A DNA stretch of 64,000 bases, taken from NCBI GenBank assembly GCA_964035545.1, contig OZ037767.1, forward strand, positions 4,480,707 to 4,544,706, read 5' to 3'. Shown here piece after piece: positions 18,167 to 61,400 of the stretch (within the stretch, counting starts at the first letter, position 1; every line of letters begins with the position of its first letter). The notes beneath the pieces were generated by a model, which did no database searches, was not told the DNA's origin, and worked only from the letters and a program-made list of their open reading frames with translations. Origin of the DNA: Bugula neritina (lineage: Eukaryota > Animalia > Bryozoa). Position numbers and translations under genes: made by a program.

Positions 18167-20586
18167 TCATGATAATTGATCACTGAGTGCTGCCTGCAGC
18201 GTTCTGTAAGCTATGTCTAGCAGCTGACGGTACTGTGTAGGAGACAGTCTCCGACACATAGAAGCAAGTGTGTCTGTATAACCACCATGTGTTGACAGAT
18301 GAGCAGCTGTGTCACCTTCTTTATCCTGAATTGAGAGAATGTCTATTAGGTCAGCGACAGCGAGCTTGTTGGTCATAGCTTTCAATGTCTCCCCATAACC
18401 GCTATCTGCTGCATAGTGTGGAGGAGTTTTATCATCTCTATTCTGGAAACGGAGTTGTCTGACCAAGTCTGGTGTTGAGACGGAGTTTACTATGTATTCT
18501 ACTGTCTCTGTATGACCTCTGTCTGCTGCACAGTGTAGAGCTGTGTTACTGTTTATATTCTGCAGTTGAAGGAGCTCAAGTGTTTCAGGTACAGATAAAA
18601 CAGATAGCATACATTGGATTATTTGAGTATAGCCTTTGTAAGCTGAATTGTGGAGAGCAGTACTACCAGATTTATCTTGTATGCTGATCAGGCTGAATCG
18701 GTCCAGTGCTGGTACACAGTCTAATATATACAGTTCAGTATTTCTAACCGGTTGTTTTCTGCTGCATTGTGTGTGATTGTTTGACCTTCTTGGTCAACAA
18801 TTTTGAATAATTTGCTTGCTTCTTCTGGGGATATCTTGTTTATTATACACTTCAGAAATTCTGTATGACATTTATGTACAGCAATATGTATAGCTGTGTT
18901 GCCATGATGGTCCTCCATAGCGATCAGTTTATAAAAATCATCAGCAGATATAGAATCTACGATATGCCTCAGAGAATCAACATTACCTGAAGAAGCTGTG
19001 CTATGCATAGCTGTATAACCTTTACTATTCTGCATGGCAAGTAACTGGAGTAGCCCATCCTTGTTCTCGATGTTGAATAATTCAAGTAATTTTGCGGTCG
19101 TTACTAAATCTATTACCTGTTTCAGTATTTCTGTTTGGCCTTTAGATGCTGCTAAGTTCACAGCTGTGTCACCATGATGGTCCTCCATAGCGAGCAGTTT
19201 ATAGCAATCATCTGCAGATATAGAATCTACGATATGCCTCAGAGATTCAACATTACCTGAAGAAGCTATGCTGTGCATAACTGTATAACCTTTACCATTC
19301 TGCATGGCAAGTAACTTGAGTAACTCATCTGATGGTACAATGTCCACTATACATTGTAATATTTCTGAATGGCCTCCATTTACGGCACTGAGTAGAGCTG
19401 TATTACCAGCCTCATTCTCAATGTTGAGCAATTCAAGCAATGCTTCGGTTTTTACTAAATCTATTACCTGTTTCAGTATTTCTGTTTCACCATTGAACGC
19501 TGCTAAGTTCACAGCTGTGTCACCATGATGGTTCTTCATAGCAAGCAGTTTATAAAAATCATCTGCAGATACAGAATCTATGATATGTCTCAGAGATTCA
19601 GTATTACCTAAAGAAGCTATGTCATGCATAGCTGTATAACCTTTACCATTCTGCATGGCAAGTAACTTGAGTAACTTATCTGCGGGTACAATGTCTACTA
19701 TACATTTTAATATTTCTGAATGGCCTTTATATGTGGCACAGAGTAGAACTGTATTACCATCTATGTTCTCAATGTTGAGCAATTCAAGCAATTCCTCGGT
19801 GGTTACTAAACCAATTACCTGTTTCAGTATTTCTGTTTGGCCATTGAATGCTGCCAAGTTCACAACTGTACCGCCACGATGGTCCTTCATAGCGAGCAGT
19901 TTATAGCAATCATCTGCAGATATAGAATCTACGATGTGCTTCAGAGATTCAGTATTACCTGAAGAGGCTATGCTGTGTATAGCTGTAAAACCATACTCAT
20001 TCTGCATGGCAAGTAACTTGAGTAACTCATGTGATGGTACAATGTCCACTATACATTTTATTGTTTCTGGATGACCTTTATGTGTGGCACAATGTATAAC
20101 TGTATTACCAACTTCATTCTTGATGCTGAATATTGTGTTTAATACATCAGCTAAGAAATAGTCTTTTATACATTCAACTATCCCTGCATGACCATAGTAT
20201 GCTGCACAATGTATTGCTGTATTACCTCTATCATTCCTAGTGCTAAGCAATTTCAGTGAGTCTTCTGCTGGTACTGCATCTATTATCTGTTTTATTATGT
20301 CTGCTTGATTGTTGTATGCTGCAAAATGTACAGGTGTTTCAGCTTCCCTATTTTGTATAGTAAGCAAACAATATAATTCAGTTGCAGTTACCAAGTCTAT
20401 CACATGCTTCACTATTTCAGTGTAGCCGTTCCGTACAGCGTTGTGTAAGGTTGTCCAGCTATTGCGACCTCTCTCACTCAGCACACTGAACCGATCTGTG
20501 TCTGGAAGCGCAGCTAGTTTCGCCCTGAACTGCTCTGGGCTGTACCAAAGTTCCCTTAGATCTTCGTATAACTGATGAGTTGACAT
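18167..20586 (-). pseudogene. Ankyrin-repeat gene copy 6, frameshifted (621-aa truncated ORF plus orphan C-terminal part)
   Basis: 2-bp TA insertion near 18725 (ctaatatatacag vs ctaatatacag/ctaatatgcag in paralogs) gives a stop at 18721. The downstream part has substitutions at otherwise invariant residues (DDKTPPHY vs DGKTPLHY). Confidence 0.8.
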
Positions 20587-29492: not shown

Positions 29493-29771
29493 GTGACTAT
29501 AAAGTAATGATGCATAGCACTAAAAAGTGCACTTTACCTCATTTAAATCATTGTACCACGAAGACTTAAAATTTATGACTTTTATTGCAAAAATAATTAT
29601 AATTAGACGTATTTAAATCTAACTGAGAGAAGAAAATTGTTGCTCTACAAAAACGCACAATTGAAATCTTACTTCTGCTAGCAAGAATAACTTTAATTAA
29701 ATTGCACACGAATATGTCAAAATGCCTATACAATTTTTACAAGTAAATTAGGAACAAACATATATAAAAAC

Positions 29772-29777
29772 TTTATT
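29772..29777 (-). promoter_or_regulatory. Candidate polyadenylation signal of the Roco-caspase gene
   Basis: AATAAA on the minus strand about 180 nt downstream of the stop at 29955. Confidence 0.4.
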
Positions 29778-29954: not shown

Positions 29955-32329
29955 TCACTGTGGGAGTTGTTTGCTATGGATTTTTGGAAAGAAGAAAAGT
30001 TTTCTGAGGTGAGTGAAAGTACATTCCTGACAATTAGGTACATTACCACCAGCTGCTTCATCTCCTGTTTTCTTACAATATGCAATACTGACTCTTCTAA
30101 CTCTGTCTTGTATCTGTAAGTAATAATAGGAAAGAAATATGAAGCTGATGACTCAACACACATCACACTGCTGATTCTAATTTTAAAGATTAGAAAAGCT
30201 GCTGGCATTGTGATACAATAAAGTCCTTCAGCTGCTAATCAAGTAGAAATACGTAATTCCAGTTACCTGAGGGATACTCAATTACTTACTATTCTAAACA
30301 GCTCACTAACATCTCTGTGACAGCTGTGTCTGTAGAATGTAGCCACCAGTATTCTGATAAACCATGTACCATAATTCTCATTTCTACCAGCCTTGTAAGC
30401 TGTAACACATGAAGGAGCTACTGTAACAGCATGTGAATTTCTCAGTCATACTTGAAGTCTAAATGACCAAATATTTACAAATATTTTTGTTGAAGAAAGA
30501 TTTTCAGTCAATTCAAATATATTTTCTTCACACTCACTCTCTGTACTTGGCTTTACAATGTAGAAGTCATCAGCATCTAGGTGAGTGAATCTATCAAAGT
30601 GAATATTTGGAGACGTATTCTGATGCGAAAAAGACTCACTCTCAGCTGTTGCTGAAGATGAGGGTAGAGGGGTAGGTGTTGGTGGTGAGACGGTGTCTGG
30701 GTTTTGAGACTGGACAGCATTACCAAAGTCAGTTCTGCCTGTATGTGAAATGCTGATACAGTAACTTTGTAATATGACGGTCAGTAAGAACTTAGGACTG
30801 AATTCACAAGCAGATTTGATTTCGAGTTGAAGGGTGTAGCCGATTTTAAGTAAAGATGGCACAGGTAAAAATGGCACAATTAAAAATGGCACAGTTAAAA
30901 ATGGCATAGGTAAAAATGGCACGGTGAAAATGGCACAGGTAAAAATGGCACAGGTAATAATGGCACGAATGGCAAAGCAGGTAAAATTGGCACACTGATG
31001 TTAAATTTCCCCAAACTCAAACCCCCCCCCCAAACCCTAACATTGAAAGTGTGTCATTTTACCTACTTTGCCATTCGTGCCATTGTCACCTGTGTCATTT
31101 TCACCGTGCCATATTTACCTGTACCATCTTTACCATGCCATATTTACCTGTGCCATTTTTACCGTCCCATTTTTACCTGTGCCATTTTTACTTGTGCCAA
31201 TTTTTACCGTCCCATTTTTACCTGTGTCATTTTTACTGAGGCCAATTTACCAGACACCGGTGTAGCCTACTTTCACATACTCCAATAACTTTAGGTATCT
31301 TTAAAATCGTGATTTCCTAAGATATTTCACCACATTCTAATGTTGTAATTATAGAAATAATGTAGCTTAACAGCTAATTTTAGTAAAATGAGTAATAACT
31401 CTGTGCTACTTACTGCCAGAGCAGGCATGAAAGATGATGAGTTTGGGTTTTCCTCTCATGGCAGGAAATTTACTAGCTGAGAGTAAATCTTTGACTTCTG
31501 ACAAGTTGACAGGTTTACAGTATCTATCATAGAAGATGTTTCCGGAAGTTCCGTGTGACATGATGACTAGAATGAACATGCCTAGTTGCTGGTGGTCTCT
31601 GTGGGTGGTCTCTTTCCTTACTTCTGATAATATTTCCTGGTAAATTAAAAGTATGTATTGAAGTGTAAAAGCAGGCTTGGGTAAATAAGTGTGTTTACAC
31701 AAAAGCAAAAGTTGCTTTAAAGTCATGCTAAAATATTTATCACAAAGAAAAACTATTAGGTAGTGACGTGTTTGTAAACTAAAACTGAGAACTGACAAAA
31801 CTAAGAATTTAAACACGAGTTAACGTATTGCAAATTTGTTGGTATACAAGAGGTATAGGTACAGTAATGGAGAAATTGAAGAAATTGAGAAAAGCCTGTG
31901 TTCTAAATTAGAAATGTAGCAATAGAAGTTATGTTCTCGCGAGAGTTTCAAACAGGCCTCAAACCAAAATTTAACAAAAAATTTTAAAGAGCATAGGCTA
32001 TCTCAACTTCTCCACTACTGCCCCTAAATGAAAGACAATGCCTCCGATCTGTAGTATAACAAGACCTGCTATATATCGCAGTTAGTGACAGCCTGAGGAG
32101 AATAAACTATATAATTTGCCACAGTAACCTGTTTACTTAGGTCAAACAGAGGATCATCTTCATTGGCTACAACAAATCCCATGTCTTTTAACAGAATTTT
32201 GATGTTAACATAGTCGATGTATGAACCATCTCGAGTTGCCTCAGTCAATTCACTGCCATCTTTTCGAAAGAACCTCTCATTGTTTATGATCATGACACGA
32301 CCTCTAACAGGGTCACTCATTGCATAAAC
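29955..32329 (-). CDS. Caspase (C14A) p20/p10 domain exons of the same gene
   Basis: YAMSDPVRGRVMIINNERF, RDGSYID, ILVIMSHG (catalytic His), GKPKLIIFHACSG (catalytic Cys), and p10 motifs DADDFYI, AGRNENYGTWFI and LRKLFFFP. Confidence 0.9.
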
Positions 32330-35300
32330 CTGTAAAACATTCAATTTGATCAGCAACCAATTTGATTACTAAAAGCAGGTAAACATAATCAAATACGAAA
32401 CTATGTGATGTAATCAACAAAAATACTTGCAAATTGTTTCAATTATATAAAAGAAAGACAATATTATCTTCTTTACTTGTTGGTGGTTGTCAAACTTCTG
32501 TTTAACTCGTTCATTGTTGGTAGGTTTCAGCTGCATACCATCAATCATAGATATACAAGGTTCAAGGTCATCTTTAGTAAAGTCAGCATATCCTTCCTCT
32601 TCTACATCAGAGCATTCACTAATGTCATCATCTTCAAGAAGAGCCGAGACAGTCTGAGTTAACAAACTTTTTTCTCCACCCATCTCTAAAATAAATGAAA
32701 GGTGACATATTCAGTACTCTAAGTAACAAATACTAAGTATCAGAATGACTATAAACAAAGAACAGAACCGATACTTTAGTGTTTCAGTCAATAATGTGAT
32801 AAATAAGTTATAATAATTGAGACCGTGTTAATTTCTGCATATAGCCTATGTAATGGATTATCTGTCATCATGAGTTTTTGCCGATTGCTGTTCACAAGTG
32901 GATGAGCTCCATTTAACAGCAGTGGTGGAAAAATTGGGATAGCCTAAGTTCTTTAACTTTTTTATTAAACTTTTTGAAATCCTTGCAAGAACATAACTTC
33001 TAATTTCTAATCTAAAACACAGGCTTTTCTCAATTTCTCTAATTGAAGATTTCCTTTATAGCAGCAACATTTTATGATCGAAAACTGATTATACCGTGGG
33101 CGGTTGAAGAGGTCTCTTCTCTTGCAGATTTCAGCTCATTGACAAATTCTTTTAAGCTATCAGCTTCTTCTGGAGATAGCGAGCTGCCTGGAGAGCAAAA
33201 CATTGTCCGTGACCACAAAAATTATTATAATTACAAGCTTCAAAATTTAAACAATGAAAGCTGATGAATAAACCACAGAGAAATAAACTATTCTACTTGA
33301 AGTTAAATTACACATACATGGATACAGAAGAGCACTTGGTATCTCTTCATCACTACACAGGGTTGTTGAAGATCCACTACACAGTCTGGTACTTGGTGTG
33401 GGATGCTTCAAAGAACGAAGACACCACGGAGGATTCAGCATTTTCTTAGGACAAGGAACTCTTAGCAGTAGGCAGTGAGCACAGTAGCATGTACTAACTG
33501 GTCTACTTGCAGTCCAAGTTTCTAAGACATGTCTAAGGATGTTGTTGTTGGTGGTAATGAGTCTCTCCCACATTCTGCTGATGTTGGTAGCATTAGATGA
33601 CACATGGAGTGACACCTTTCTAGATTTGTAGTCATGTACCAACTGTGTGTAGATACCATCTTGGTAGACATTGGCTCCATTTCTTTTCACTTTAATCACA
33701 GCAAACTCATCAGAAAACAACTCTAACAAACCAACATTCATTTGGTGATAAACATATTGCGGTAGCGCTAAGCCATTGAATTTGGTTTCAACTCGAAGGA
33801 GCATGTTTTTTGGCGATGTGTATGAGGTATTAAAGAGGTCGTTAGCAAACTGGGGAACAATAAAACAGGGCTCTTTGAAATCGCCAGGTAAAGGACCATA
33901 TAACAAACGGAATGTGAGAAGCAAACAAACAGCAACTTCTACATCCTCCAAACTAGTAAATGGTGTTTCCTGTTTAACAAGATGAGTGAGAAGACATTGC
34001 ATCATCAAACCACTGTTGGTGAAATGACTTACAAATCTCTCAAAATCTTCCTTTTCAACAGGCATTCCATTTTCTGAAAAATATGGCTGGAACTTATCAA
34101 CCCTACTCTGCCATATGTTGGGATCATGATGATACAAGACACAGAGAAGTTTGGTGACTTCTGAAATCCTGTGGAATATGTATGGTCGGAGAGAGCCAAT
34201 ATCTTTATACCACAAAATTTTGCCGCAGTCATGCATGTATGTGAGAATTATGTCCAGCTGACTTGACTCAATGTTTTGAAGTTCTGTTTGTACGTCTTTC
34301 AGCATCTCATCAAAGGTGCTGTACACAGAGGGAATAGACAAAACTTTTTCATTCACTTCTTCCCAGACCAGAGGTAAAGGTTTTACAAAATGTTGACTGC
34401 TTTGAAGAAGAGACTCTTTAATCATGTCAAACACTTCATATTTATCCTCTTTTCCCACGTCATAAATGTCCTCATCAAGAAAGATTCCTTTAGTTGATTC
34501 ACTGAAATGTTTGATTTGAGCAAATTCTCCTCCCAATGCCTTCTCTTCCCTAATAATTTCCTCACACAATTGATTTGAAATTTTCAGAAAACTATTTTTA
34601 AGTTCCTGAAATTTTGCACTTTGAAACTTATCTTCATGTGTAAAGATAAGTTTTGGAGCACCAAGAGTTGGGTTAGCAAGATAGAGGTGAGACATGTAAT
34701 CAAAGGCCAATCTTCTAACAGCTTCTCTGTGTGTGGATTCACTTGAAATCTCATCATACTGTTTCATGTTAACTACTATGACTGGAATGCAATTTTGTCT
34801 CAGTGTCAGTTGATAGGTTATATGGTAGACCTCCTGGCCTCCCATATCAACAAGACGGAGTACCTTACCATCTATCTCAACCTCTTCAACATTAAACACC
34901 TTTGTTGTCTCATCTACCACAGCGTCTAGACCTCTGTTGGTCAGAACTCTTTTTTTATCAGCATTTTGTAATGTTTTGATTAAACTGGTCTTTCCAGCCA
35001 TTGTGTTACCTAGCACAACTATAGTAACAAATGGTAGGTTTCTACCAGAACCTTTAGCCAAGTCTGTGTAATATTGTCTCACAGCATCTATTCCTCTCTC
35101 GCATACTTCTAGTGGAGGGGATGTGAGAGCATGGCAACCAGATACATACAATGTGTGAAGTTGAGTTAGCTGTAATATCTTGGGGTCTAGAGATGTCAGG
35201 GACTCATTACCAGATATATGCAGTATCTTCAGGCTAATCAGTGAGTACACCGGAAATGGTAAACTGGTGAAGTCATTATATGGCATGTATAGTTCCTCTA

Positions 35301-37210
35301 ATTTCTGTAGACTTTCTATGCTAATAAAAATATATTTGCAGTTTTAAAACTGCTTCCATACAAAGATAAATACTAACACTCCCAAATATATTGCATAATA
35401 TACCATGATGATGAATAAATAAGATTGTGCAATGTAGAATATAATAATCACATTTCATAGTTAGGAGTTATACTCCCAGCTATTTGATACAACAGCAAGC
35501 AAATGATACAATGTATCATCACACGGCCACAGCACATTGACTACTATTACAATATTATCTCAGCATAGCAAATCAATGAGAGTTTCATGAACACAGCTGA
35601 AAATGATTATTTTGTTAGCTTTGTCATTCAGTCAATAATTTTTCCAAAATATTACATTAACTATTATGTACAAGTTTCAGACAGTCTCAATATATAATTT
35701 CATTTCAGTGCAAAGTGTTCTATTAAAACAAAGTGGGAATTGTCACCACTTCTATCTGAGTTCATCGGATAAAATAAAATAGTACAGGTGTATGAAAACA
35801 AACATATAATACGCATCTATACTGACAATATATTTATAGATTATGTTTAGTACAGCTAGTATCATTTTACATTATAATATAATACACACCTGTTTGGTAG
35901 AGTTGTTAGTTTACAACTCCTCATGTACAACTCTCTCAGTGATAGTAAGGATGTGAATATATTGTCAGGTAGACCTTCAGATAGATTATTATGTGATATA
36001 TCCAATATCTCAAGATTCTTCAGTGAAGATATGCTGTAACATAGCATATAAATATGGAATGTTGCATAATAATTTAGTGAGAAAATAACCAGAGCATGTA
36101 ACTCCACGAACATGACATCTAATCTACTTTTACTAACAGAGTATTGGAGTTGTCCTTCCCTTGAATATTAAGTACATGTGTACTGTACAAACAAGAGAGC
36201 AGCCGTGGTCTAGGGGTTTGAGCGCTGGCTTAGTAAATAAAAAAGTCATGGGTTTGAACCCCAGTAAAGGCCATCGGTGATGTTAGGAAGAGCATCCAGT
36301 CACAATTGCTCCTGTATTACATTTAAATAAGTCCTTAGCCCACTTTAAACCCTTTCCATCAGGGGTTCTTACTGGGATAGTGACTATAAACTTCCGCGAG
36401 GTTTTTTACTGCACAAACTACTTCATCTATATTCTATACTATAACAGTTGAAGTATATGAAATACTATTGCATAGTTATTACATTCTCTCCTACTCTATA
36501 TTGTTATACATGTAATTATATAAGACACACCTGTTTGGTAGAGTTGACAGTTCACAGTAACTCATGCCCAACTCTCTCAATGATAGTAAGGATGTGAATA
36601 TATTGTCAGGTAGACTTTTAGATAGGTGATTATATGATATATTCAACACCTCAAGATTCTTCAACGAAGCCATGCTGTTGTAACATAACATAACATGCTG
36701 GTAGAAAATCATCAAAGCCAATTTAGCTTCTACCGGTATGTATCATTAATACTCTACACTTCGCTCAATAATAATATGATAATAGCTCACTTATAAGCCA
36801 GTATAGCTTTAGGTTATAACAATTTCCTACTTGATCTAAACATAACTCATTTCACAACAAAATAATTTACTTGTCAGCATTTATTAGAGTAATAAGTGTG
36901 AAGTTGTCCTACCATTTCTATCTGAATACATCTGATAGAGTAGAATAAAGTAGTTTTCTTATAACATAATATACAGAGTCCAGTTGACTTAATAAATATA
37001 GTGCAGATAACTTCATGACGTATAAAATAATACGCACCTGTTTGGTAGAGTTGGCAATTTACAGTGACTCATTTCCAACTCTTTCAATGATAGTAAGAAT
37101 GTGAATATACTATCAGGTATGTGATTCTCTGATATATTCAATACCTCAAGATTCTTCAGTGAAAATAGGCTGTAACATAATATAAAGCTATTGAATCGCA
37201 TGTATTATAA

Positions 37211-37289
<79 letters not shown>

Positions 37290-39281
37290 TTTGATACAAG
37301 TCACTTCAATTATATAAAAACATCATACATTTCCACACAATTATATAAACAATAATTATATTCATATATTATATTTAGTAGAGTATCATTTTACATCATA
37401 ATATAATATACACCTGTTTGGTAGAGCTGGCAGTTTACATTCCCTCATGTACAATTTTCTCAGTGATAGTGACAATGTGAATATATTGTCAGGTAGACCT
37501 TCATATAGGTGAGTATGTGATATATCCAATATCTCAAGATTATTCAGTGAAGATATGCTGTAACATAGCATATAGATATGAAACGTTGTATAATAATTTA
37601 GTAAGAATATAACCACAGCATGTAACCAATTAAACTGGCATCAAATCTACTCTTACTGACTAAGTATTGGAAATTGTCATCCACCAGAATATTAAGTACA
37701 CATGTACTGTAAAAACCACTTTAACTATATTATAACACTCAAGTTATGAATTACTTTTGTATAGTAAGTACAGTCTCTCCTATAGCTATATATTATTGTA
37801 CATGTAATTATATAATATGCCTTAATGCGTTGACTTTTTGTGACTTATTTGTATGGTAGAAATTTTTAATAATTTGTAGGCGTTTATAAAGATGTGTATC
37901 ATTTACTGGTTCATTACGTTCAAATACTTATCACATAAAACACAGTATTTATATAGATACAGCATGTGGGAGGAGAGTAAGTGGGAGGAGCTAACAATAT
38001 AAACAACAATCTTATTATGACATAATACATACCTGTTTGGTAGAGTTGACAGTTCACAATAACTCATGTACAATTCCCTCAATGATAGCACAGATGTGAA
38101 TATATTGTCAGGTAGACCTTCAGATAGGTTATTGTGTGATATATTTAATACTTCAAGATTCTTTAGTGAAGATATACTGTAACATAGTATATAGATATAT
38201 GGAATGTTGCATAATACAGGTAATTTAGTGAGAATATATAATCACAGCGTGTAACTCGTTGACAATGACTTAACATAACAATTAAGTTATGAATTAATAT
38301 TGCATAGTACGTTAGTACATTTTCTCCTACTCTATATTACTATACGTATGTAATTATATAATACACACCTGTTTGGTAGAGTTGACAGTTCACAGTAACT
38401 CATGTCCAACTCTCTCAGTGATAGTAAGGATGTGAATATATTGTCAGGTAGACCTTCAGATAGATTATTATGTGACACATTCAATACCTCAAGATTCTTC
38501 AGTGAAGATATGCTGTAACATAAAATAAAGTTAAAAAACTGTCAAAGCCAATTTTATTTCTAGGTATTATTATTATGCTTGCATAAGTAACAGTTGCTAC
38601 TAAAGCTAGCGTTATTATAAGAGGAGATTACTTCACATTCTACTCAAACTACAGATAATAGCTGTAGTGTTGAGTTTACCCAGCGGTCCAGCGGTATAAT
38701 GGTTAGCACGATTGCTTGTAAGCTGGAGGTCTCGGGTTCGAATCCCAGCGAGAGAAAAATTATTTAATAAGCTATTTCGGCCGTTATTGAAATGTGGTAG
38801 TACTCCGAGAGAGTAAAGAGGCCAGTGAAATTCCTGAGAACTAGGTGGGATGTAGTGTTGAATTTACCCAGTGGTCCCATGGTGTAATGGTTAGCACACT
38901 TGCTTGTAAGCTGGAGGTCTCGGGTTCAAATCCCAGTGTGGGCAAAATTATTTTCTAACAGCTCACTTATAAATGTAGTTTAAAATTATACGAATATTAT
39001 ATAACAATATTATATAACAATATTATATAACAATATTATATAACAATATAAGAATATTATACCGGCCCCAGTCAGCATTGCTGTCTACTCCACACACCCA
39101 TAGATGTGCTAGATGAGGAAACAGTGTGTTCATATTTGGAGGAATGTCATACTCCAGTATAACATGAGTAACTGTATGATGTCTACTTTTATCATTGATC
39201 TCTTCTATAGTGTAGAGTGTAGTATCATTCTCCATCCACTTGTCATCAGCTCCATCTATACTGGATGTGTTGAACCACACC
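29955..39281 (-). CDS. LRR-ROC-COR-caspase fusion protein (Roco/MFHAS1-like N-terminal part plus peptidase C14 caspase), about 1,400 aa, spliced
   Basis: Exons (minus strand): 39281-39063, 38512-38369, 38176-38033, 37557-37414, 37169-37038, 36674-36531, 36033-35890, 35320-33318, 33187-33095, 32685-32477, 32329-32129, 31636-31414, 30738-30538, 30399-30290, 30113-29955. All introns are GT-AG with compatible phases and no internal stop. The start is uncertain (candidate ATG at 39235). Confidence 0.82.
30842..31258. mobile_element. Foldback-type MITE in a caspase intron
   Basis: Left arm of ~15-bp repeats (GGTAAAAATGGCACA)n, right arm the reverse complement. Flanked by a 9-bp direct repeat GGTGTAGCC (30833-30841 and 31259-31267). 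Confidence 0.8.
31862..32020. mobile_element. Short MITE-like element, with a related copy in inverted orientation at about 32920-33040
   Basis: TIR CAGTAATGGAGAAATTGA / TCAACTTCTCCACTACTG. Internal sequence (gagaaaagcctgtgtt...agaagttatgttct) recurs reverse-complemented in a nearby intron. No TSD seen. Confidence 0.55.
33318..35320 (-). CDS. Large exon: terminal LRRs, ROC GTPase and COR region
   Basis: LRR cap (SPPLEVCERGIDAVRQYY), G1 GNTMAGKTS, G3 DMGGQEVYHITYQ, G4-like FTHED, COR motif LTYMHDCGKILWY, and a C-terminal Cys cluster CYCAHC. Confidence 0.9.
35890..38512 (-). CDS. Six tandem LRR exons (two LRRs each) of the Roco-caspase gene
   Basis: Five 144-nt exons and one 132-nt exon, all phase 2-2. 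Consensus ISSLKNLEVLNISHNNLSEGLPDNIFTSLLSLRELYMSYCELSTLPN. Confidence 0.88.
36195..36406 (+). mobile_element. tRNA-derived SINE in an LRR intron
   Basis: A-box-like (gccgtggtctagggg) and B-box-like (gggtttgaacccc) head. 14-bp TSD tactg(t/c)acaaac(a/t)a with 2 mismatches. Absent from the paralogous intron near 37705. Confidence 0.7.
37216..37285. repeat. (TA)n microsatellite
   Basis: Direct observation. Confidence 0.95.
38663..38960 (+). mobile_element. Small insertion with ~110-bp terminal direct repeats, each containing a tRNA-like sequence
   Basis: Repeats begin TGTAGTGTTGA at 38663 and 38851, each with an A box (TGGTGTAATGG-like) and B box (GGTTCRAATCC). The empty site gataatagctcacttataa is seen in the paralogous intron near 36778. 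Confidence 0.6.
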
Positions 39282-40914
39282 CTGTACTCTACACAAGTAT
39301 ATAAATAATAACTTTGATATGAGGAATAGAATGTTTATAAATATCATCAGCTATATTGAATGTGTAGAATCATGACTAGCAAAAGTTACAATTTACAACA
39401 AACTTTTGAATTTTCATCATTCATTGTTACTCTGAAGATGGGCAAAGTGGTGCCCCCCCCCCCCAATATTAGTTAATTACTTTGCCTAATAAAGCAATAA
39501 AACCTCAATGTTTCTCGTATATACTAATTCATAATCAAATTGCTAGCTAGCAAAGATATATTTATAATAAACATTTTATATTTTAAATATTTAAACAAAT
39601 TAAGACTGTGATTTAATCTGAATGTATACTATGTCAAACTATAACCTAACAGTATGACTCAACCTTGTAGCTGGTGCAGACGTAAACTACAGCAGATGGC
39701 AGGTAAAAGGGTAGCCATATTGTTTATAGCTCTGTACAGCATGTGTTATAATATATAATATAATACTATTTTATAGACAGAAGATGTACTTCAACTACAA
39801 GATATAGAAACTATGGTTACTGAATACAAGCAGTAAAACTTTCCTTATGTCACTGAAACCCACTTAATATTTATAGGCTATTTATCATTTCTTACACAGT
39901 CTGTTGCAGAGTTAATTTGATAGACTCTGTAGTTACTGATTACAGTGTCTGTATTTATATGATTTACTAACCAGTCACTGGCGGAGGTAGAGGAGTGAGT
40001 GGAGGTTGAAGTCTAGGAACAGATTTACGTTGACCCATCCTGTAGTCACTGGCTATAGCTATAGTCGTATCCAATAATCTTCATTCTTAACAACCAGCTT
40101 ATTGAGTTTATTTCTTTAAACTCTATACATGGTAAAATACTAAAGCTCATTTGTGAAGCATGGGCTTTTTTCTGTGACTGTTTATATACACACCAAAGTT
40201 AACTAACTTTTAGTCACTTACATTTTCATAATAGATTAAACTGTACTTACAGTGGATTTAAATAACATCAACAGGCGAGATGAGATACTCTTCACCACCT
40301 GCATATGTTACATAATATCCTCCATAAATTGGCATGATTATCCTCTCACTACGACATGGAGAGGACAAGTGGCTTCACTCATCTTCCCTAGTGTGTGCTA
40401 GTCAGTGCTGCTACTGCCAGTATTGTGGGGGTTATATGATCACGTGATAGGTTGCTCAAATGTCATGCCTTTTGGTATTGACTGTTATATCACCTGCAGA
40501 ATAATGGTGGCATTCTAGATATGTATATACACTTTGGTATAAGTTCTAGTTTATAGATGAACTTTGTAGTCTACTCCTTATAGCTAATGAGAAGAGATGT
40601 AAAAGAGCTGGTACAATAAAAAGCTTTGTTTTATGATGTTCACAAGGAACACATAAATACATGTATATATAAAGAGTTTTGTAGCTGCGATGCACAAGTT
40701 ATGTGCAAGTTGTTTGCAATATAATTCTTGATATTTAAATTAATCAATTGCATTCAGTTGATAACAAAAAATGTAATTCTTTGAGTATAACAATAAACTT
40801 GAATCAATCTGGACACCGTGCCTGATGAGTAGTAATGGAGCAAATTTATTAGCATAGGTTACATGTCACAGACTAACAGGCATAATCAACGTCAGTGCTC
40901 CCGCAGTATCTCGT

Positions 40915-41130
40915 GAAGATAAAGCCTCTGTCATGCATAGCTGTGTAACCTGTTCTGTATTTTAAGTAACTTGAGTAACTCATCTGCTGGTACAATGTCT
41001 ACTATACATTCTATTATTTCTGGATGACCTTTATATGCAGCACAGAGTGAAGCTGTATTACCAGCCTCATTCTTAATGCCTCAAGCAGCTGAGAAATAGA
41101 AATATACATATCACTATCCCTGCATGACCA
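40915..41130 (-). pseudogene. Degraded fragment of the ankyrin-array gene family
   Basis: Close match to array CDS (aagtaacttgagtaactcatctgctggtacaatgtctactatacatt...) with deletions and frameshifts. Confidence 0.85.
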
Positions 41131-43080: not shown

Positions 43081-46000
43081 TTTCACTGTTGGAAACACTT
43101 AATTACATTGATAATAATATCATTTCAGTTGCTATAATTGTGCCAGGGCTTAAGGTAGAACTTGTATAGAAATCTGGCCTGCATCTCCGTTAAAAAAATT
43201 ATATTTGAGTTGTTGTGAGCCTATATATTTATTATCTGCCCCCTATGAGCCTATATATATTATATCTGCCCCCTATGAGCCTATATATTCTACATCTGCC
43301 CCCTATGAACTTATATATATTATATCTGCCCCCTATGAACTTATATATATTTTATGTGCCCCCTATGAACCTATATATTCTATATCTGCCCCCTATCAAC
43401 TTATATATTATATCTGCCCCCTGTGAACTTATATATATTTTATGTGCCCCCTATGAACCTATATATTCTATATCTGCCCCCTATCAACTTATATATTATA
43501 TCTGCCCCCTATGAACTTATATATATTATATCTGCCCCCTATGAGCCTATATATTCTATATCTGCCCCCTATGAACCTATATATATATTATATCTGCCCC
43601 CTATGAACTTATATATATATATTATATCTGCCCCCTATGAACTTATATATATATTATATCTGCCCCCTATGAACTTATATATATATATTATATCTGCCCC
43701 CTATGGGCATATATATTCTATATCTGCCCCCTATGAACCTATATATATATTATATCTGCCCCCTATGAACTTGAATATATATATATATTATATCTGCCCC
43801 TATGAGCCTATATACTCCATATCTGCCCGCTATGAACCTAGATATGTGCCCTCTTTCACTGTTGGAAACACTTATTTACAGTGATGATAATATCATTTCA
43901 GTTGCTATAACTGTGCCAGGGCTTGAGGTAGAACTTGTATAGAAATCTGGCCTGCATCTCCGTTAAAAAATTATATTTGAGTTGTTGTGAGCTTATATAT
44001 TATATCTGCCCCCTATGAGCCTATATATTCTATATCTGCCCCCTATGAACTTATATATATTATATCTGCCCCCTGTGAACTTATATATATTTTATGTGCC
44101 CCCTATGAGCCTATATATTCCATATCTGCCCCCTATGAGCTTATATATTCTATATCTGCCCCCTATAAGCCTATATATTCTACATCTGCCCCCTATGAGC
44201 TTATATATTCTATATCTGCCCCCTATGAGCCTATATATTCTACATCTGCCCCCTTTGAGCCTATATATATATTATATCTGCCCCCTATGAGCCTATATAT
44301 TCTACATCTGCCCCCTTTGAGCCTATATATTCTATATCTGCCCCCTATGAGCTTATATATTCTATATCTGCCCCCTATGAAATTATATATTCTATATCTG
44401 CCCCCTATGAGCCTATATATTTATTATCTGCCCCCCTATGAGCCTATATATATTATATCTGCCCCCTATGAGCCTATATATTCTATATCTGCCCCCTATG
44501 AACTTATATATATTATATCTGCCCCCTATGAACTTATATATATTTTATGTGCCCCCTATGAACCTATATATTCTATATCTGCCCCCTATCAACTTATATA
44601 TTATATCTGCCCCCTGTGAACTTATATATATTTTATGTGCCCCCTATGAACCTATATATTCTATATCTGCCCCCTATCAACTTATATATTATATCTGCCC
44701 CCTATGAACTTATATATATTATATCTGCCCCCTATGAGCCTATATATTCTATATCTGCCCCCTATGAACCTATATATATATTATATCTGCCCCCTATGAA
44801 CTTATATATATATATTATATCTGCCCCCTATGAACTTATATATATATTATATCTGCCCCCTATGAACTTATATATATATATTATATCTGCCCCCTATGGG
44901 CATATATATTCTATATCTGCCCCCTATGAACCTATATATATATTATATCTGCCCCCTATGAACTTGAATATATATATATATATATTATATCTGCCCCTAT
45001 GAGCCTATATACTCCATATCTGCCCGCTATGAACCTAGATATGTGCCCTCTTTCACTGTTGGAAACACTTATTTACAGTGATGATAATATCATTTCAGTT
45101 GCTATAACTGTGCCAGGGCTTGAGGTAGAACTTGTATAGAAATCTGGCCTGCATCTCCGTTAAAAAATTATATTTGAGTTGTTGTGAGCTTATATATTAT
45201 ATCTGCCCCCTATGAGCCTATATATTCTATATCTGCCCCCTATGAACTTATATATATTATATCTGCCCCCTGTGAACTTATATATATTTTATGTGCCCCC
45301 TATGAACCTATATATTCTATATCTGCCCCCTATGAACTTATATATTATATCTGCCCCTATGAACTTATATATATTATATCTGCCCCCTATGAGCCTATAT
45401 ATTCTATATCTGCCCCCTATGAACCTATATATATATTATATCTGCCCCCTATGAACTTATATATATGTATTATATCTGCCCCCTATGAGCTTATATAATA
45501 TATTATATCTGCCCCCTATGAGCCTATATATTCTATATCTGCCCCCTATAAGCCTATATATATTCTAATCTGCCCCCTATAAGCCTATACATTCTATATC
45601 TGCCCCCTATAAGCCTATATATTTTATATCTGCCCCCTATGAGCCTATATATTCTATATCTGCCCCCTATGAACTTATATATATTATATCTGCCCCCTGT
45701 GAACTTATATATATTTTATGTGCCCCCTATGAGCCTATATATTCCATATCTGCCCCCTATGAGCTTATATATTCTATATCTGCCCCCTATAAGCCTATAT
45801 ATTCTACATCTGCCCCCTATGAGCTCATATATTCTATATCTGCCCCCTATGAGCCTATATATTCCATATCTGCCCCCTATGAGCCTATATATTCTATATC
45901 TGCCCCCTATGAACTTATATATATTATATCTGCCTCCTATGAACTTATATATATATATTATATCTGCCCCCTATGAGCTTATATATTCTATATCTGCCCC

Positions 46001-46190
46001 CTATGAACTTGTATATATTTTATGTGCCATCTTTGAGCTCATATACTATTTATGTGCTGCTATGAGCCTAGATATGTTATATGTGCCCCTTATGAGCTCA
46101 TATATGCTGCATGTATGCGATCCCCATAAGCCTGTGTATACTATATCTGCCCCATATGAGTTGATGTATACTATGTGTGCCCTATATCAG
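43081..46190. repeat. ~30-bp minisatellite (TATATCTGCCCCCTATGARCYTATATAT..) in three higher-order blocks
   Basis: Each array is preceded by the same ~135-bp leader, starting at 43081, 43854 and 45051. Confidence 0.95.
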
Positions 46191-56201: not shown

Positions 56202-58434
56202 CATGCCAAATATTTACTACAAAATTCAAAAATAGCATAAATTAAGTAGTATTACCGTGCCTATTTGCATCCAATTTACTAGTCTTACATTTATAGCAAC
56301 TGTAACGTATTTTGTGTATAATGGTTATTGCAAGCATTATTCAATTCATATTCACATTGTAATCACAGCGAAGCTTTAACTTTGTAGCTTTGCATTTATG
56401 TGCATGATTGAGTTTTAATTTTTCTTTTAATTTTATGTGCAATAAAAATGTGTTTAAAAACTTTACCAATAAACAAAACTAAAAAAATGTACACATAAAA
56501 TAGAAAAACAATAAAATAACAAAAGTGGCAAAATTTTTCCTTTATAACTTATATAAACTCGCGGTACCAATCTCGGCATAATGGCGCCCATATGATTCCG
56601 TAAGATTTGCTAATGGCAACACTCCTAATATATACCACTCTGGCATAACACACAATCATTTGAGTTGGGAGGGCCACTTCACCGGAGGTGTTTTGTGACT
56701 AGTTATAATATGAACTACTAAGTTATTACATCTTTAAACTTAGATTCTATTGCATTTATATTTAGGAACAGTTCAAATGATTTACAGATATATTGAGAAT
56801 TTACGTATTAGTAATTAAAGCCAGTAGATTTTTGTCAACACATCAACAATTTTGAAACAGGAATCTAATTTAGATTAAGCTGAAAACATGTCTAATAACA
56901 ATTCAAACTAAATACTATTCTGTTTAGACTTTAGTGCATCTATTCTACTGTCTCTCTGTCAATGAATTCAAGTGAGAGCGCTGCATAACTAATCATGGAA
57001 TATTATTTTCATATTTAGTTTATTTTCATTATATCCATGTCATTGCTATGTGGGTCATTTTTCTGTATTTAGCAAGCACTAGAAAACTAGAAACAAAAAT
57101 TAAAAGTCATGGCAATAAAGCAGGTGGTAGTATTTTTGTGCACGGTGATTAAGACATGTAAAGGTATAAAGCTAAGAGAAAATTCTGCAAAAAGAAGTGC
57201 ATTTTATTGCCATGCATCTTGCAAATAAAAATGTGGCTTTGCTCAGTTGTTTTGGAGTGTGACTTTCTACCCTTGAAAACTGTATCACTTATACCGTGGA
57301 TAGTAGATGAAACACCGGTATATACTACGCAAGTAATTTGATGAAAGAATAAAAGTTGTAGGTGTGGCATTATTAGCATCATGATGATAATAATATAGAT
57401 ATGTGTTCTGGCGTTCTGAAAATGTGCTCTGCTTCTCTTTTGTAAGCAGGGAGCATGTAAGATGACCCGATGTTGACAAGCTACAAGCTAGCAGGTACTA
57501 AAGCTACTGACAAGTGATAGCCAAAGGAAAGCCAACACAAAACACTCTGGAGCTGGAGCTTAGCCTGGTAGGTTAATACTACAGTAGGGAATATGGAGTA
57601 TGAAATAAATTTTACAAAATTATATGAGTGTGAGATTTTGACAAACGAATACACCACTATCCACTATGCAAAAGTAACCACAAAGTTTCTTGACAAAAAT
57701 TTAACAAAAAGCGTGGTAGAAACAATTTAACAAAGTTTGAGGAATGTATAGTTGTTTGTTTTATTTGTTAACAAATAATTAGGTTTATTTAAAAAACATT
57801 TAGCAGCTACACTTTTATAAAATGTGCATAAATTGTCAAAATGCGGGGTGTGCTAAATAAAGTAAAATAAACATTGGATATAATTCTAAGTCAAATACAA
57901 GTATTCATATCTATAAATATCTTTAACAAGTTCTCTACTAAATATAATAATATATCAAAAATAAGGTGAACTCTGTAAAAAAAGTATTCTTACTGCCCAA
58001 GCTATATTTTTCAACAGCTGTATGTTGCTTATAGTAATTAAAACTACAAAATTTACCACTGAAACTTTGAATTTTGCCATAGATGGAGTTGGCCACTTAC
58101 CAAAGTGTAATGTTTATTTACAACCTGTTACAGCCACTATAAGCATCGAATGCTTTCTTGTAAAGTGTAGGTCAATTACATTTAGTTTGTAGAGTCTGTG
58201 CTTCAAGGGCTGCTTTACAGATACTTTTTGACTGATAAGAATCGTGACATTTTATCAAAATTATTGACAGTTTATTTAAAAAATAATATTACTTGCAAAT
58301 AGTAAAGTATAACTAATGTAATAACACAAAAACAAATAACAACTAATATTTACATAACAGCCTTACTGTAAAAGCTGTGAGTACTATACATGCAGCACTA
58401 GGATACAAATAGCAGACAGTAAAATATTTAGGAT

Positions 58435-61400
58435 TCAACTTTTAAGCTTATCTTTCTTGCTATTATTGTCATAAATTTTGTTGAGCAAAGAGGTAGTCTG
58501 TGTATGAACTTTTGCCAACACCTTCCATTTATTTACGTATTGCCCCGCGACAGCCATATCTCTCAACGATTTAATTGGCTTTTCTTTTCTCTCCCTTGTC
58601 TGAGATATTGTTTCCTTCTCTGAGACTAAGTCTGCTAGGGATGAGTCATTGTTGTGATCTTCCAGAAACTCAAGTAGTACTTTGTCTATTAGACCCAGTA
58701 AGGTTTCTCTTTCAGTTATATTTTCCTAAAGTTTTATAATTACAATTATGCGGATTTTATTAAAAACATTAAAAATTAATATAGAAATAACTTTGGTCTT
58801 ATTGCATGGCATGCAATTATCTTAGTTCTATAGCTAAAGATATAGTAGTACAGAATTAAGTTTAGTGATAAATTTTTAATAAATCTTTGAGAAATCAAAT
58901 GTGTATAGAAACATACTTCAAAAAGTGGTTTGATTATATAAAAAGAATTCTTTTGCCTTCATAGTTTTCCATCTAGAGAAAAGCTCAAGTGTTGAAAAGA
59001 AAACTTTTGAAGTTATCTTAATATATTATCCTGTGTACACCTACAACATCTAGGTTCTAAATTGGCGCAAAATTGTTCCAGGAAAAACGGCCACAGCAAA
59101 GTATTACCTGCAGATATTCCATAAGCATAAGATATTTAAAGTAGACATCTTTGTGCCATGAGGTTACTGTATCCACCGACTTTAACCTCTTGCAGATCTT
59201 TTGAGCAGCTTTCTGCCACAAGTCCACCGACGTGAGACTTTCGGCTGGGGCAAGCTTTTCTCTCCCCTGTGTTTATTATAAGATATAAGTGACAGCTACG
59301 GTATAGCGTGTGTGCAAGTCTACATGGAACCCATACTAATCCATACCAATAGGCTAGATAGTAAATAGGATTGTTTTGATAGCCTACTTACCACAGAGAC
59401 TGGGGTGTAGCGGTTTGCACTATGCCCAAGTTTCTTATTATGTGTGTCTACAACAGTTGGACGACTTGCAGAGGGACACAGGCTTGTGGGTATGGGAGAC
59501 AACACGACAGACTCGGCAGCACTCAGATTGTACGAGGAGAACTTCCTAATATTGTGTTTTACTTCTTCACTTATATCCTTTACTGCAAATATTGTATATA
59601 ATAATTACTGTATTTTATTACTAGAATGACCGCTAATTAACAGCTTAGATCATTTTATACACAATATTTACACAGTTTGAGAACTAAATTACTAGTCTGT
59701 TTAATGAAAAGCTATAGTGAACCTTTGCAAGTCACATTCCAAAGTTGAATAAAAATCTTTCAAAAGTTTTACTAATTCAATTTTGTCTTTTTTTATACAG
59801 TTATCGAACCTATATATATTTATTTTAAAGTTCTCCCCAATAGTGTTATATTTGTGTCTGTAACCTTATGCTGAAAAAACAAAACAAAACAACCCACTTG
59901 AAATAACAAACCGTTATTTTCTAGTGTCTCATTCACTGCTAAATGATTGCTCTTGAACTTCTTTTTTCTTAAAAGCTTATCTTTGGTTTTTAGAGCACCT
60001 TTAACCACTTTCTGGAATTTTATGAGTGGCACATTCAAAACCTGTTGATCTCTCTCAATGGGGTCAGGCTTCACAGCCACCTTGTTCTTCCGGTTCAGCA
60101 ACCACTGTAGTGTAAACAGATCTGGCCATTTCAGAGAGCTGGCAGCACCAGATATCTCTTCATTGTCGACAGCAGCATAGTTGGCTGCCAGTTTCTCACC
60201 TTTCATTTTTTCTAGCCTGACAAACAACAGATTATGATTAGTGGTGTCTAGTAATACTAGAGGGGCACACCACAAAGTTCTTGTCCTTCTTATGATTAGG
60301 TACTCTGTTGTTTCATTCCATCAGGTTAATGGTTTGTTCCATTATACTCTACATTCTAAAGATACTGACGCCAGTCGAACCTTAGCTAGATTGCATGGGT
60401 AACTGCTAACTGTGGTATATGATTACGGAACAGCTACAGCCGCAGTGAATAGGACATATCTACCACTACCACTACCACTACCACTACCACTACCACTACC
60501 ACTACCACTACCACTACCACTACCACTACCACTACCACTACCACTACCACTACCACTACCACTACCACTACCACTACCACTACCACTATCACTGCCTGAT
60601 CTATAAGCGTGTTTTAAAAATACACCTAAGTATGATCTAAAAATATACCTACATATGATCTAAACACATATTAATATCATATTATTATATATCAACATAC
60701 TTGGAGTTGTCTTCAACGTTAGCCTCGTACCACTTGTGTGTCTGGTGGCCGGTTGCTCTTCGCATGTTAATCTTAGTGACATTATCAGCTTCCTTTCTAA
60801 TGTCTCTCTCCGTATACTTTTCTGCCTTGAAATGATGATACACATAGATAAAGTTTATTACTTATGCATGTATAGCAGCTGTATGGCTTTGTAATGGATG
60901 CTTCAACAACCAACCAGCTATGATCGAAGTCATTTACTATTTGCCAACTTTCATGTGTATACAGTGCAAAATAATATATAGAGTGTCATCAGAACATTCA
61001 CACGCTTTAAAATACTATAATATATTAGCACTATAGATGGAAGAGAATATAATAACACTTTACTAGGAAAGATAGAATAAATTACATATAATGAAAATAT
61101 ATAGAATTATGCATAGTATAGCACTCACCTGTTCCACCAGACTCTGGCGTATTTGTACAAAGTTATTAACTAATATTCCAATCAGCATGTTGCCTATGAT
61201 GTACGAGCCAAATATCACCCAGAGAATCACAAACGTTGCAGCACCGGTACTATTCACTTCCTGTCAAGTTATACAGTAGCTTTACAATTGTGTGGCAACA
61301 CTCTTTGAGAACAAGACATGCAGCTACTGTTTGCACATTTAGATGCAAAATAGTGGAGACAAAAGTTATTTCAAATAAGTCCACTTGTAATATTCTTCAA

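What the first reader, a model, noticed from the sequence alone, without database searches (positions are those of the whole stretch)
29955..39281. Roco-caspase: LRR sensor, ROC-COR GTPase and caspase protease in one polypeptide
Seen: 15 GT-AG exons splice in one unbroken frame from an LRR array through intact ROC motifs (GNTMAGKTS, DMGGQ, THED) and COR. Two short linker exons (33187-33095 and 32685-32477, phases 1-1 and 1-0) then lead straight into a full caspase p20/p10 domain. I see no CARD, DED or death domain between them. Known: characterised animal Roco proteins (LRRK1/2, DAPK1, MFHAS1) carry kinase or death domains or no effector; COR mediates nucleotide-regulated dimerisation; initiator caspases are activated by induced dimerisation. 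Inference: this is a single-chain receptor-protease ('one-piece inflammasome') in which LRR ligand binding or GTP cycling switches a tethered caspase. I do not know of a characterised animal protein with this architecture.
Basis: partly seen in the sequence, partly recalled or inferred. Interest (0 to 1): 0.95.

Follow-up and report, generated by a model that had tools for sequence, protein, structure and literature searches.

The report
Bryozoan LRR-Roco GTPase fused to caspase
This moss-animal gene joins a fast-changing leucine-rich-repeat sensor, an LRRK2-like GTPase switch and a caspase protease in one reading frame, and it is one of at least 71 such genes in the genome, so it looks like an untested family of one-chain immune or cell-death receptors.

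Summary
Observation confirmed. Fifteen GT-AG exons run in frame from LRRs through ROC-COR (fold matches LRRK1/2 and CtRoco) and two linker exons into a caspase with His/Cys and both S1 arginines; Gln283 is His. The start exon is unresolved. The genome (probably Bugula neritina) has at least 71 ROC-COR exons, each followed by a same-strand caspase exon. The ROC-exon donor is conserved in all 30 paralogs examined while the read-through tail is not. A Watersipora RefSeq model has the same exon layout. RNA joints were seen only among caspase-side exons, from relatives, not at ROC-to-linker. The 144-nt LRR exons vary mostly on the predicted binding face; caspase types are swapped between near-identical ROC-COR modules; NACHT is almost absent. 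The architecture is not unprecedented: amphioxus models carry it ('LRRs-caspase' noted 2008), and Kaur 2021 lists it in bacteria. I found no paper on the bryozoan family, nor any experiment. Best reading: one-chain receptor-protease, caspase switched on by ROC-COR dimerisation (0.6). This scan found the family before on other DNA of this genome.

The parts
40201..40566 (-). Conserved 5' region, probably promoter and first exon. Candidate ATGs at 40513, 40335 and 40304; candidate donors after 40494, 40299 and 40251. Not resolved.
   Evidence: 19 other genomic matches (17 long, at 71-82% identity), most 1-4 kb upstream of a paralog's first internal exon and some in tandem
39063..39288 (-). First coding exon found: N-terminal cap or degenerate LRR, phase 2 donor
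   Evidence: 60 matches in genome; weak match to N-termini of Watersipora models
38369..38512 (-). LRR cassette exon (144 nt, phase 2-2, two repeats)
38033..38176 (-). LRR cassette exon (144 nt)
37414..37557 (-). LRR cassette exon (144 nt)
37038..37169 (-). LRR cassette exon (132 nt, 4 codons shorter)
36531..36674 (-). LRR cassette exon (144 nt)
35890..36033 (-). LRR cassette exon (144 nt)
   Evidence: LRR_1 E=1e-7
33318..35320 (-). Large exon: last LRRs, ROC GTPase (G1 35010-34984, G3 34848-34834, G4 34641-34630), COR-A, COR-B and a conserved C-terminal Cys cluster
   Evidence: AlphaFold pLDDT 92.8, pTM 0.91; Foldseek LRRK1 E=1e-22, CtRoco E=4e-20, LRRK2 TM about 0.6
33095..33187 (-). Linker exon 1 (phase 1-1; one predicted helix in the homolog)
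32477..32685 (-). Linker exon 2 (phase 1-0; acidic, mostly low-confidence in the homolog model)
   Evidence: RNA joint to the next exon in relatives
32129..32329 (-). Caspase large subunit, part 1; Arg179 equivalent at 32233-32231 (RDGSYID)
31414..31636 (-). Caspase large subunit, part 2; catalytic His 31555-31553 (SHG), Cys 31423-31421 in HACSG (His at the Gln283 position)
   Evidence: HACSG fixed in 13 genomic copies
30538..30738 (-). Pro/Ser-rich intersubunit linker and start of the small subunit
30290..30399 (-). Caspase small subunit; Arg341 equivalent at 30385-30383 (AGRN for SWRN)
29955..30113 (-). Last coding exon with stop; AATAAA at 29777
   Evidence: RNA contigs

Best explanation
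A functional gene for a roughly 1,430-residue cytosolic receptor-protease, in a large bryozoan family. SHOWN here: LRR array, ROC-COR and caspase are in one reading frame; the catalytic dyad and both S1 arginines are intact; ROC, COR and caspase are under purifying selection; LRR variation concentrates on the predicted concave face. INFERRED: (1) the LRR face binds a microbial, allogeneic or damage ligand, or a host protein altered by infection; (2) this shifts the ROC-COR nucleotide cycle from a monomer (probably GTP-bound) to a COR-mediated dimer; (3) the dimer brings two tethered caspase domains together across the ~100-residue linker and activates them by proximity, as for initiator caspases, with no CARD/DED adaptor and possibly no need for autoprocessing; (4) the caspase cuts after an acidic residue (Asp most likely; Gln283-to-His and Trp340-to-Gly should alter the fine preference) and triggers cell death or defence signalling. 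The family probably does the job NLRs do in other animals.
For: Frame and motifs. 71 of 71 ROC-COR exons are followed by a same-strand caspase exon, 66 within 5 kb. ROC-exon donor conserved in 30/30 paralogs, read-through tail 4-45 aa. Linker-exon splice sites kept wherever the exons align fully. Same exon layout in Watersipora XP_067947674.1; about a dozen Watersipora models and a Bugula model with the same ROC-COR-caspase layout. pN/pS about 0.2 for ROC, COR and caspase exon 11; pN 0.31 on LRR face codons versus 0.08 elsewhere; entropy up to 3.2 bits at face positions versus mostly under 1 in the framework. Only one partial NACHT match and four CARD matches in the genome. Roco monomer-dimer cycle and COR dimerisation (PMC6337361). 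S1 residues (PMC2064784).
Against: No RNA joint for 33318/33187 or 33095/32685 among the 15 of 79 joints displayed. RNA contigs are mostly 90-99% identical, so they come from paralogs or alleles. No dimer model was possible, and the homolog monomer model has pTM 0.66 with no defined ROC-COR/caspase contact. Face codons also have raised pS (0.30), so pN/pS on the face alone is about 1.05; diversifying selection is suggested, not shown. Gln283 is replaced. No ligand, substrate or immune induction is known. The NB-ARC search found nothing at all, not even the Apaf-1 one might expect, so exon-wise family searches are insensitive and NLR scarcity is provisional.
Confidence: 0.6

Rival explanations
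1. One-chain protein, but the switch runs the other way or not through the LRRs: the COR dimer holds the caspase inactive and GTP-driven monomerisation or membrane recruitment frees it, or the protein reads cellular GTP level or stress rather than a ligand.
For: Roco proteins may act as GTP sensors, and monomer and dimer both occur in cells (PMC6337361). From my own knowledge, the LRRK1 dimer is described as autoinhibited. The linker is long and flexible.
Against: Caspases need a dimer to be active (established knowledge). LRR-face variability with a constant framework argues for ligand reading.
Confidence: 0.15
2. The HACSG subfamily is a weak or non-apoptotic protease, or a regulatory partner, that heterodimerises with other family members or processes a signalling substrate without killing the cell.
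For: Gln283-to-His is fixed in 13 copies; Trp340 is Gly; no conserved Asp site in the intersubunit linker. Other paralogs carry E(T/V)CSG. An earlier scan note reports Cys-less paralogs (s1-453578, not checked).
Against: His, Cys, Arg179 and Arg341 equivalents are all kept; the small-subunit exon is 97-100% identical across 11 copies; pN/pS 0.22 on exon 11.
Confidence: 0.12
3. The family serves allorecognition or colony-level programmed turnover (zooid fusion or rejection, polypide regression) rather than defence against microbes; the biochemistry would be the same.
For: Bryozoans are colonial and recycle polypides (own knowledge). Variable LRR faces would fit self/non-self reading.
Against: No expression data tested. 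Similar Roco-effector sets in bacteria and solitary amphioxus are read as counter-invader systems.
Confidence: 0.08
4. Two adjacent genes: a Roco gene ending at the read-through stop (33247) and a separate caspase starting at the ATG at 32683.
For: ATG at the start of exon 10; an AATAAA at 32966 in intron 9; some Watersipora 'solo caspase' models begin in the linker exons; the ROC-to-linker joint was not displayed in RNA.
Against: That Met is Ile, Val or Ala in several paralogs, and intron 8 has no polyA signal. The donor is conserved in 30/30 paralogs while the tail is not. The exon chain is the same in RefSeq models of another genus. The introns are only 130 and 409 nt.
Confidence: 0.04

Closest known systems
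Amphioxus 'LRRs-caspase' direct-connection genes (Zhang et al. 2008, PMC2575513); database proteins such as BRAFLDRAFT_67388 (P0100) and P0171-P0181
   Same: LRR, Roc, COR-A/B and Peptidase_C14 in one chain; intact dyad; the same caspase intron positions. The paper proposed a direct link from pathogen recognition to apoptosis.
   Different: The paper's text does not mention ROC-COR, and I could not confirm which models it meant. Amphioxus P0176 has LRR-ROC-COR in one exon and one linker exon, QACRG, and sits in a Roco clade that alternates caspase with GT4, death or OTU effectors. Shared or separate origin is unresolved (AU p=0.36).
Bacterial AP-GTPase (Roco) counter-invader proteins (Kaur et al. 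2021, PMC8195603)
   Same: Variable N-terminal LRRs, AP-GTPase, COR and an interchangeable C-terminal effector that includes caspase; LRR+AP-GTPase+COR+CASPASE rows in the supplement. The supplement also lists a sponge APGTPase+COR+DED+TRADDN+CASPASE protein.
   Different: Those are bacterial predictions; the kind of caspase-like domain was not checked. The protein here has an animal-type caspase with Arg179/Arg341, animal introns and a 70-plus gene expansion.
MFHAS1/MASL1, LRRK1/2, DAPK1 and Chlorobium tepidum Roco
   Same: LRR-ROC-COR core and fold; RefSeq names the homologs 'MFHAS1 homolog'.
   Different: No kinase, WD40 or death domain; a caspase follows COR. Identity to solved Roco structures is 12-16%.
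Brown algal LRR-ROCO candidate immune receptors (PMC11378527)
   Same: Expanded family; LRRs on phase-2 cassette exons with variable faces.
   Different: 72-nt single-repeat exons there, 144-nt double-repeat exons here; no effector domain in the algae.
NLR inflammasomes and the Apaf-1 apoptosome
   Same: Works like them in logic: repeat sensor, nucleotide switch, proximity-activated caspase.
   Different: Small GTPase plus COR instead of a STAND ATPase; caspase tethered in cis; no death-fold adaptor; dimer rather than wheel expected.

Membership tests
Roco proteins | ROC GTPase with G1, G2, G3, G4 motifs | tested here: met
   Pfam Roc E=4e-8; G104, G109, K110, T139, D158, G161, T227, H228, D230 nearly invariant in 71 homologs
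Roco proteins | COR domain directly after ROC | tested here: met
   Pfam COR-A weak (E=0.03) but Foldseek aligns 650-720 columns to LRRK1, LRRK2 and CtRoco, and the isolated COR 3dpt at E=2e-10
Roco proteins | GTP hydrolysis and nucleotide-dependent COR dimerisation | not testable with these tools
   Single-chain prediction only; the catalytic/dimer arginine of CtRoco was not mapped
Caspases (MEROPS C14A) | Caspase fold with large and small subunits | tested here: met
   Peptidase_C14 on exons 11 and 12, caspase-3 hits; homolog P0035 covers profile 1-225/233 at E=1.5e-36 and matches exons 11, 12, 14 and 15
Caspases (MEROPS C14A) | His-Cys catalytic dyad | tested here: met
   SHG and HACSG align to caspase-3 SHG and QACRG
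Caspases (MEROPS C14A) | Basic S1 pocket Arg179, Gln283, Arg341 (canonical QACxG) | tested here: inconclusive
   Both arginines kept; Gln283 is His. Not the Asp/Glu pattern of meta- or paracaspases. Watersipora homologs keep Gln
Caspases (MEROPS C14A) | Cleavage after Asp | not testable with these tools
   Needs an enzyme assay
Initiator caspases (caspase-2/8/9/10) | CARD or DED prodomain | tested here: not met
   No such match in exon 8 or linker exon 10; exon 9 is 30 aa; homolog linker low-confidence
NLR / STAND receptors | NACHT or NB-ARC ATPase with C-terminal LRRs | tested here: not met
   The switch is a ROC GTPase and the LRRs are N-terminal
LRR-AP-GTPase-COR-effector systems (Kaur 2021) | Variable LRRs + AP-GTPase + COR + interchangeable C-terminal effector in multiple paralogs | tested here: met
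   here the effector varies among caspase types rather than among unrelated domains
LRR-AP-GTPase-COR-effector systems (Kaur 2021) | Counter-invader function | not testable with these tools
   Predicted only, also in the source paper
LRRK / DAPK kinases | Protein kinase domain | tested here: not met
   No kinase match in any exon scanned

The most novel reading that the evidence does not exclude
Bryozoans have replaced the NLR repertoire with 70-130 single-chain LRR-ROC-COR-caspase receptors. Specificity is diversified by duplication and exchange of 144-nt LRR cassette exons, output is diversified by swapping caspase modules with different S1 pockets (Gln, His or Glu at position 283), and the Roco GTPase cycle directly gates the protease. 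That would be an animal intracellular immune receptor class built on a small GTPase rather than a STAND ATPase, and a natural one-step reporter of the disputed Roco monomer-dimer cycle.
Probability: 0.35. Interest if true: 0.9.

Novelty: new variant of a known kind. Interest (0 to 1): 0.72.

Why it matters
Whether Roco proteins (including Parkinson-linked LRRK2) signal as GTP monomers or GDP dimers is still debated (PMC6337361). A caspase works only as a dimer, so a natural ROC-COR-caspase turns that question into a protease assay. For immunology, it would be a receptor class where sensor, switch and executioner share one chain, expanded to at least 71 genes in a genome where I found almost no NACHT domains. 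It would also give the bacterial AP-GTPase conflict systems and the amphioxus hybrids, both only predicted, a tractable animal example. The His and Glu variants at the Gln283 position are natural probes of caspase P1 specificity.

Tried and rejected
All searches were exon by exon by reference, and the multi-domain fold used a database homolog (P0035). Acceptor 30420 for exon 14 was rejected: RNA contigs and the gapless caspase register favour 30399. The start exon could not be fixed (three candidates). A first AU test rejecting one clade of caspase-bearing Rocos (p=0.0002) was set aside because amphioxus caspase forms nest among GT4 and death forms; the fair test does not reject a common clade (p=0.36). 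The caspase tree lacked reference caspases and had long branches, so it cannot assign a caspase class. Two further ROC queries added only five loci because only top candidates are scored. Nine literature searches found no paper on bryozoan Roco-caspases; the library lacks most subscription journals. Linker Met 32683 as an independent start was rejected as not conserved.
Full report
1. Observation. I read the - strand 40500-29000 and did phase bookkeeping exon by exon. Fifteen exons with AG/GT ends chain without a stop for 1424 codons: a cap exon (39288-39063), six phase 2-2 LRR exons (five of 144 nt, one of 132), a 2003-nt exon with the last LRRs, ROC and COR, two linker exons (phases 1-1 and 1-0) and five caspase exons ending at the stop at 29955, with AATAAA at 29777. 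The joined model was left out of all searches and folds; every search was by exon reference. Pfam finds Roc (E=4e-8), LRRs and Peptidase_C14 (E=4.5e-10 on exon 12, 0.001 on exon 11), but COR-A only at 0.03. The AlphaFold model of exon 8 (pLDDT 92.8, pTM 0.91) settles COR: its best Foldseek hits are LRRK1, C. tepidum Roco and LRRK2 over 650-720 columns, and the isolated COR domain. A region at 40201-40566 is conserved upstream of many paralogs and holds three candidate start exons, which I could not rank.

2. One gene or two. RNA support is indirect. Contigs from three presumed RNA runs cover all exons from the ROC exon to the last, and show joints 32477/32329, 32129/31636, 31414/30738, 30538/30399 and 30290/30113, several only approximately. 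They are mostly 90-99% identical, so they come from paralogs or alleles, and the two ROC-to-linker joints are not among the 15 of 79 joints displayed. Run X14 covers introns and behaves as DNA. Comparative evidence is strong. In all 30 paralog loci fetched, the ROC-COR exon ends at the same GT donor, while the read-through tail ranges from 4 to 45 residues. Linker-exon acceptors and donors are kept wherever the exons align fully, and the Met at the start of exon 10 is not conserved. The Watersipora subatra RefSeq model XP_067947674.1 (1419 aa) has LRR cassette exons, one large LRR-ROC-COR exon, two short linker exons and five caspase exons with boundaries matching this gene; a second model agrees. 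About a dozen Watersipora models and a Bugula neritina model carry ROC-COR and caspase in one chain. The host is probably B. neritina (216 Mb, symbiont metatranscriptome hits, bryozoan-only close homologs); this is inference.

3. Family. The ROC-COR exon has 66 scored matches of 153 candidates in the genome, and two other queries add five. Reading these tables against the caspase exon-12 table (137 matches) by eye, all 71 have a same-strand caspase exon downstream: 66 within 5 kb, the rest within 16 kb. Clusters lie on contigs C1 and C6. This copy is an outlier on C3, next to an ankyrin-gene array, while its closest relatives (about 85%) are in the C1 cluster, which suggests a relocated duplicate. 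A NACHT profile finds one partial match, CARD four and NB-ARC none. These searches are exon-wise and insensitive, so NLR scarcity is provisional; NACHT domains are, from my own knowledge, often encoded in one long exon, which makes that blank more telling than the NB-ARC one.

4. Sensor. The 144-nt LRR exons are 81-92% identical within the gene, and all 19 full paralog exons have AG/GT ends in the same phase. Across 24 exons the framework is nearly invariant, while positions 14, 36, 38 and 39 reach 2.5-3.2 bits; these are the exposed positions of the LxxLxL strands. On ten motif-defined face codons pN is 0.31 versus 0.08 elsewhere: 1.7 times the exon-wide pS but only 1.05 times their own pS. 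I had seen the entropy before listing those codons, so this is suggestive. ROC, COR-A, COR-B and caspase exon 11 all have pN/pS near 0.2. The layout parallels brown algal ROCO genes (PMC11378527).

5. Effector. His and Cys align with caspase-3. Arg179 and Arg341 equivalents are kept, so the S1 pocket remains basic, unlike meta- and paracaspases (PMC2064784). Gln283 is His, and this is fixed in 13 genomic copies with synonymous variation, so it is a subfamily trait, not decay. Other paralogs with 77-85% identical ROC-COR exons carry a quite different caspase (42-46% identity in exon 12, E(T/V)CSG where visible). On the ROC-COR tree the caspase type changes at least twice on well-supported branches and 4-5 times in bootstrap trees. 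Identity to this gene is equal for both types over ROC (0.86 vs 0.87) but diverges in columns 421-540, within COR (0.88 vs 0.70). Recombination within COR has therefore probably moved caspase modules between sensor-switch modules; four loci were classed only. The intersubunit linker is Pro/Ser-rich with no conserved Asp site, so autoprocessing may be dispensable. In the model of the Watersipora homolog, ROC-COR and caspase fold as separate confident domains joined by a mostly low-confidence linker with one helix.

6. Mechanism. Established knowledge: COR-B drives Roco dimerisation, and the current model has a GTP-bound monomer and a GDP-bound dimer (PMC6337361); initiator caspases are activated by dimerisation (own knowledge). 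Inference: ligand binding to the LRR face shifts the protein into the COR dimer, which pairs the tethered caspases. I give this 0.6. Rivals are an inhibitory dimer or GTP sensing (0.15), a weak or regulatory protease (0.12), allorecognition or zooid turnover rather than microbial defence (0.08), and two genes (0.04).

7. Comparison with what is known. The ROC-COR search also returned amphioxus BRAFLDRAFT_67388, with LRR, Roc, COR-A, COR-B and caspase. A search with it found about a dozen more in Branchiostoma species, among relatives that end in GT4, death, OTU or trypsin domains instead. Zhang et al. 2008 reported amphioxus LRRs-caspase hybrids as direct links from recognition to apoptosis, without naming ROC-COR in the text (PMC2575513). 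Kaur et al. 2021 described bacterial LRR-AP-GTPase-COR proteins with at least 24 effector types including caspase; their supplement lists LRR+AP-GTPase+COR+CASPASE rows and a sponge APGTPase+COR+DED+TRADDN+CASPASE protein (PMC8195603). Bryozoan and amphioxus ROC-COR modules form separate, well-supported clades with different LRR exon structure, but a common clade is not rejected (AU p=0.36). No paper on the bryozoan family or on any experiment with this architecture turned up. This scan has flagged the family on other DNA of the same genome: 62 notes hold these words. Those notes are not independent support.

8. Verdict. Real gene, a Roco family member by tested features, with an animal caspase bearing a non-canonical S1 residue. 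The concept has been predicted in amphioxus and bacteria, so it is a new variant of a known kind. The large bryozoan expansion, cassette sensors, effector swapping and apparent NLR scarcity are undescribed as far as I could find, and the protein makes the Roco dimer question directly testable. Interest 0.72.

Noticed in passing
window 1-28993: Tandem array, period about 4 kb, of at least seven single-exon ankyrin-repeat genes on the - strand (526-851 aa, 48-91% identical, internal 117/351-nt repeat units). The copy at 18167-20586 is split into two ORFs, probably by a frameshift.
   Followed up: partly
window 40904-41130 and 29493-29701: A degenerate ankyrin-gene fragment lies just upstream of the Roco-caspase gene and array-unit DNA just downstream, suggesting the gene landed inside the ankyrin cluster.
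   Followed up: partly
G000:C1:34343515-34349769, 34224375-34227186, 34248223-34250199: The conserved 5' region is present in two or three tandem copies ahead of some paralogs, hinting at alternative promoters or first exons.
   Followed up: no
L005, L007, L010, L011, L016, L020, L022, L024, L027: A second caspase class with E(T/V)CSG (Glu at the Gln283 position) sits behind near-identical ROC-COR modules; its P1 preference may differ.
   Followed up: partly
window 33318-33490: A CxxC motif and later cysteines at the end of COR-B are nearly invariant across bryozoan and amphioxus homologs; possible zinc site next to the linker.
   Followed up: no
window 34641-34630: G4 reads THED here and in L020, THKD in most paralogs.
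   Followed up: no
window 30850-31236: Inverted arrays of a 15-nt unit in intron 12 (MITE-like); other high-copy repeats lie in introns 9 and 11.
   Followed up: no
window 38660-38945: Two tRNA-like (SINE-like) fragments in the first intron, by eye; ARAGORN calls no tRNA.
   Followed up: partly
window 43216-46105: A 30-nt minisatellite, about 94 copies, gives spurious ORFs.
   Followed up: no
window 57000-63400: Exon-like frames on the - strand resembling a voltage-gated-channel-type membrane protein (about 61600-63400) and another gene (about 58400-60300); judged by eye only.
   Followed up: no
P0182-P0219, P0233 (Branchiostoma): Amphioxus LRR-ROC-COR proteins end in GT4 glycosyltransferase, OTU, death, trypsin or caspase domains, an effector set much like the bacterial AP-GTPase systems. 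Lingula has ROC-COR-CARD forms.
   Followed up: partly
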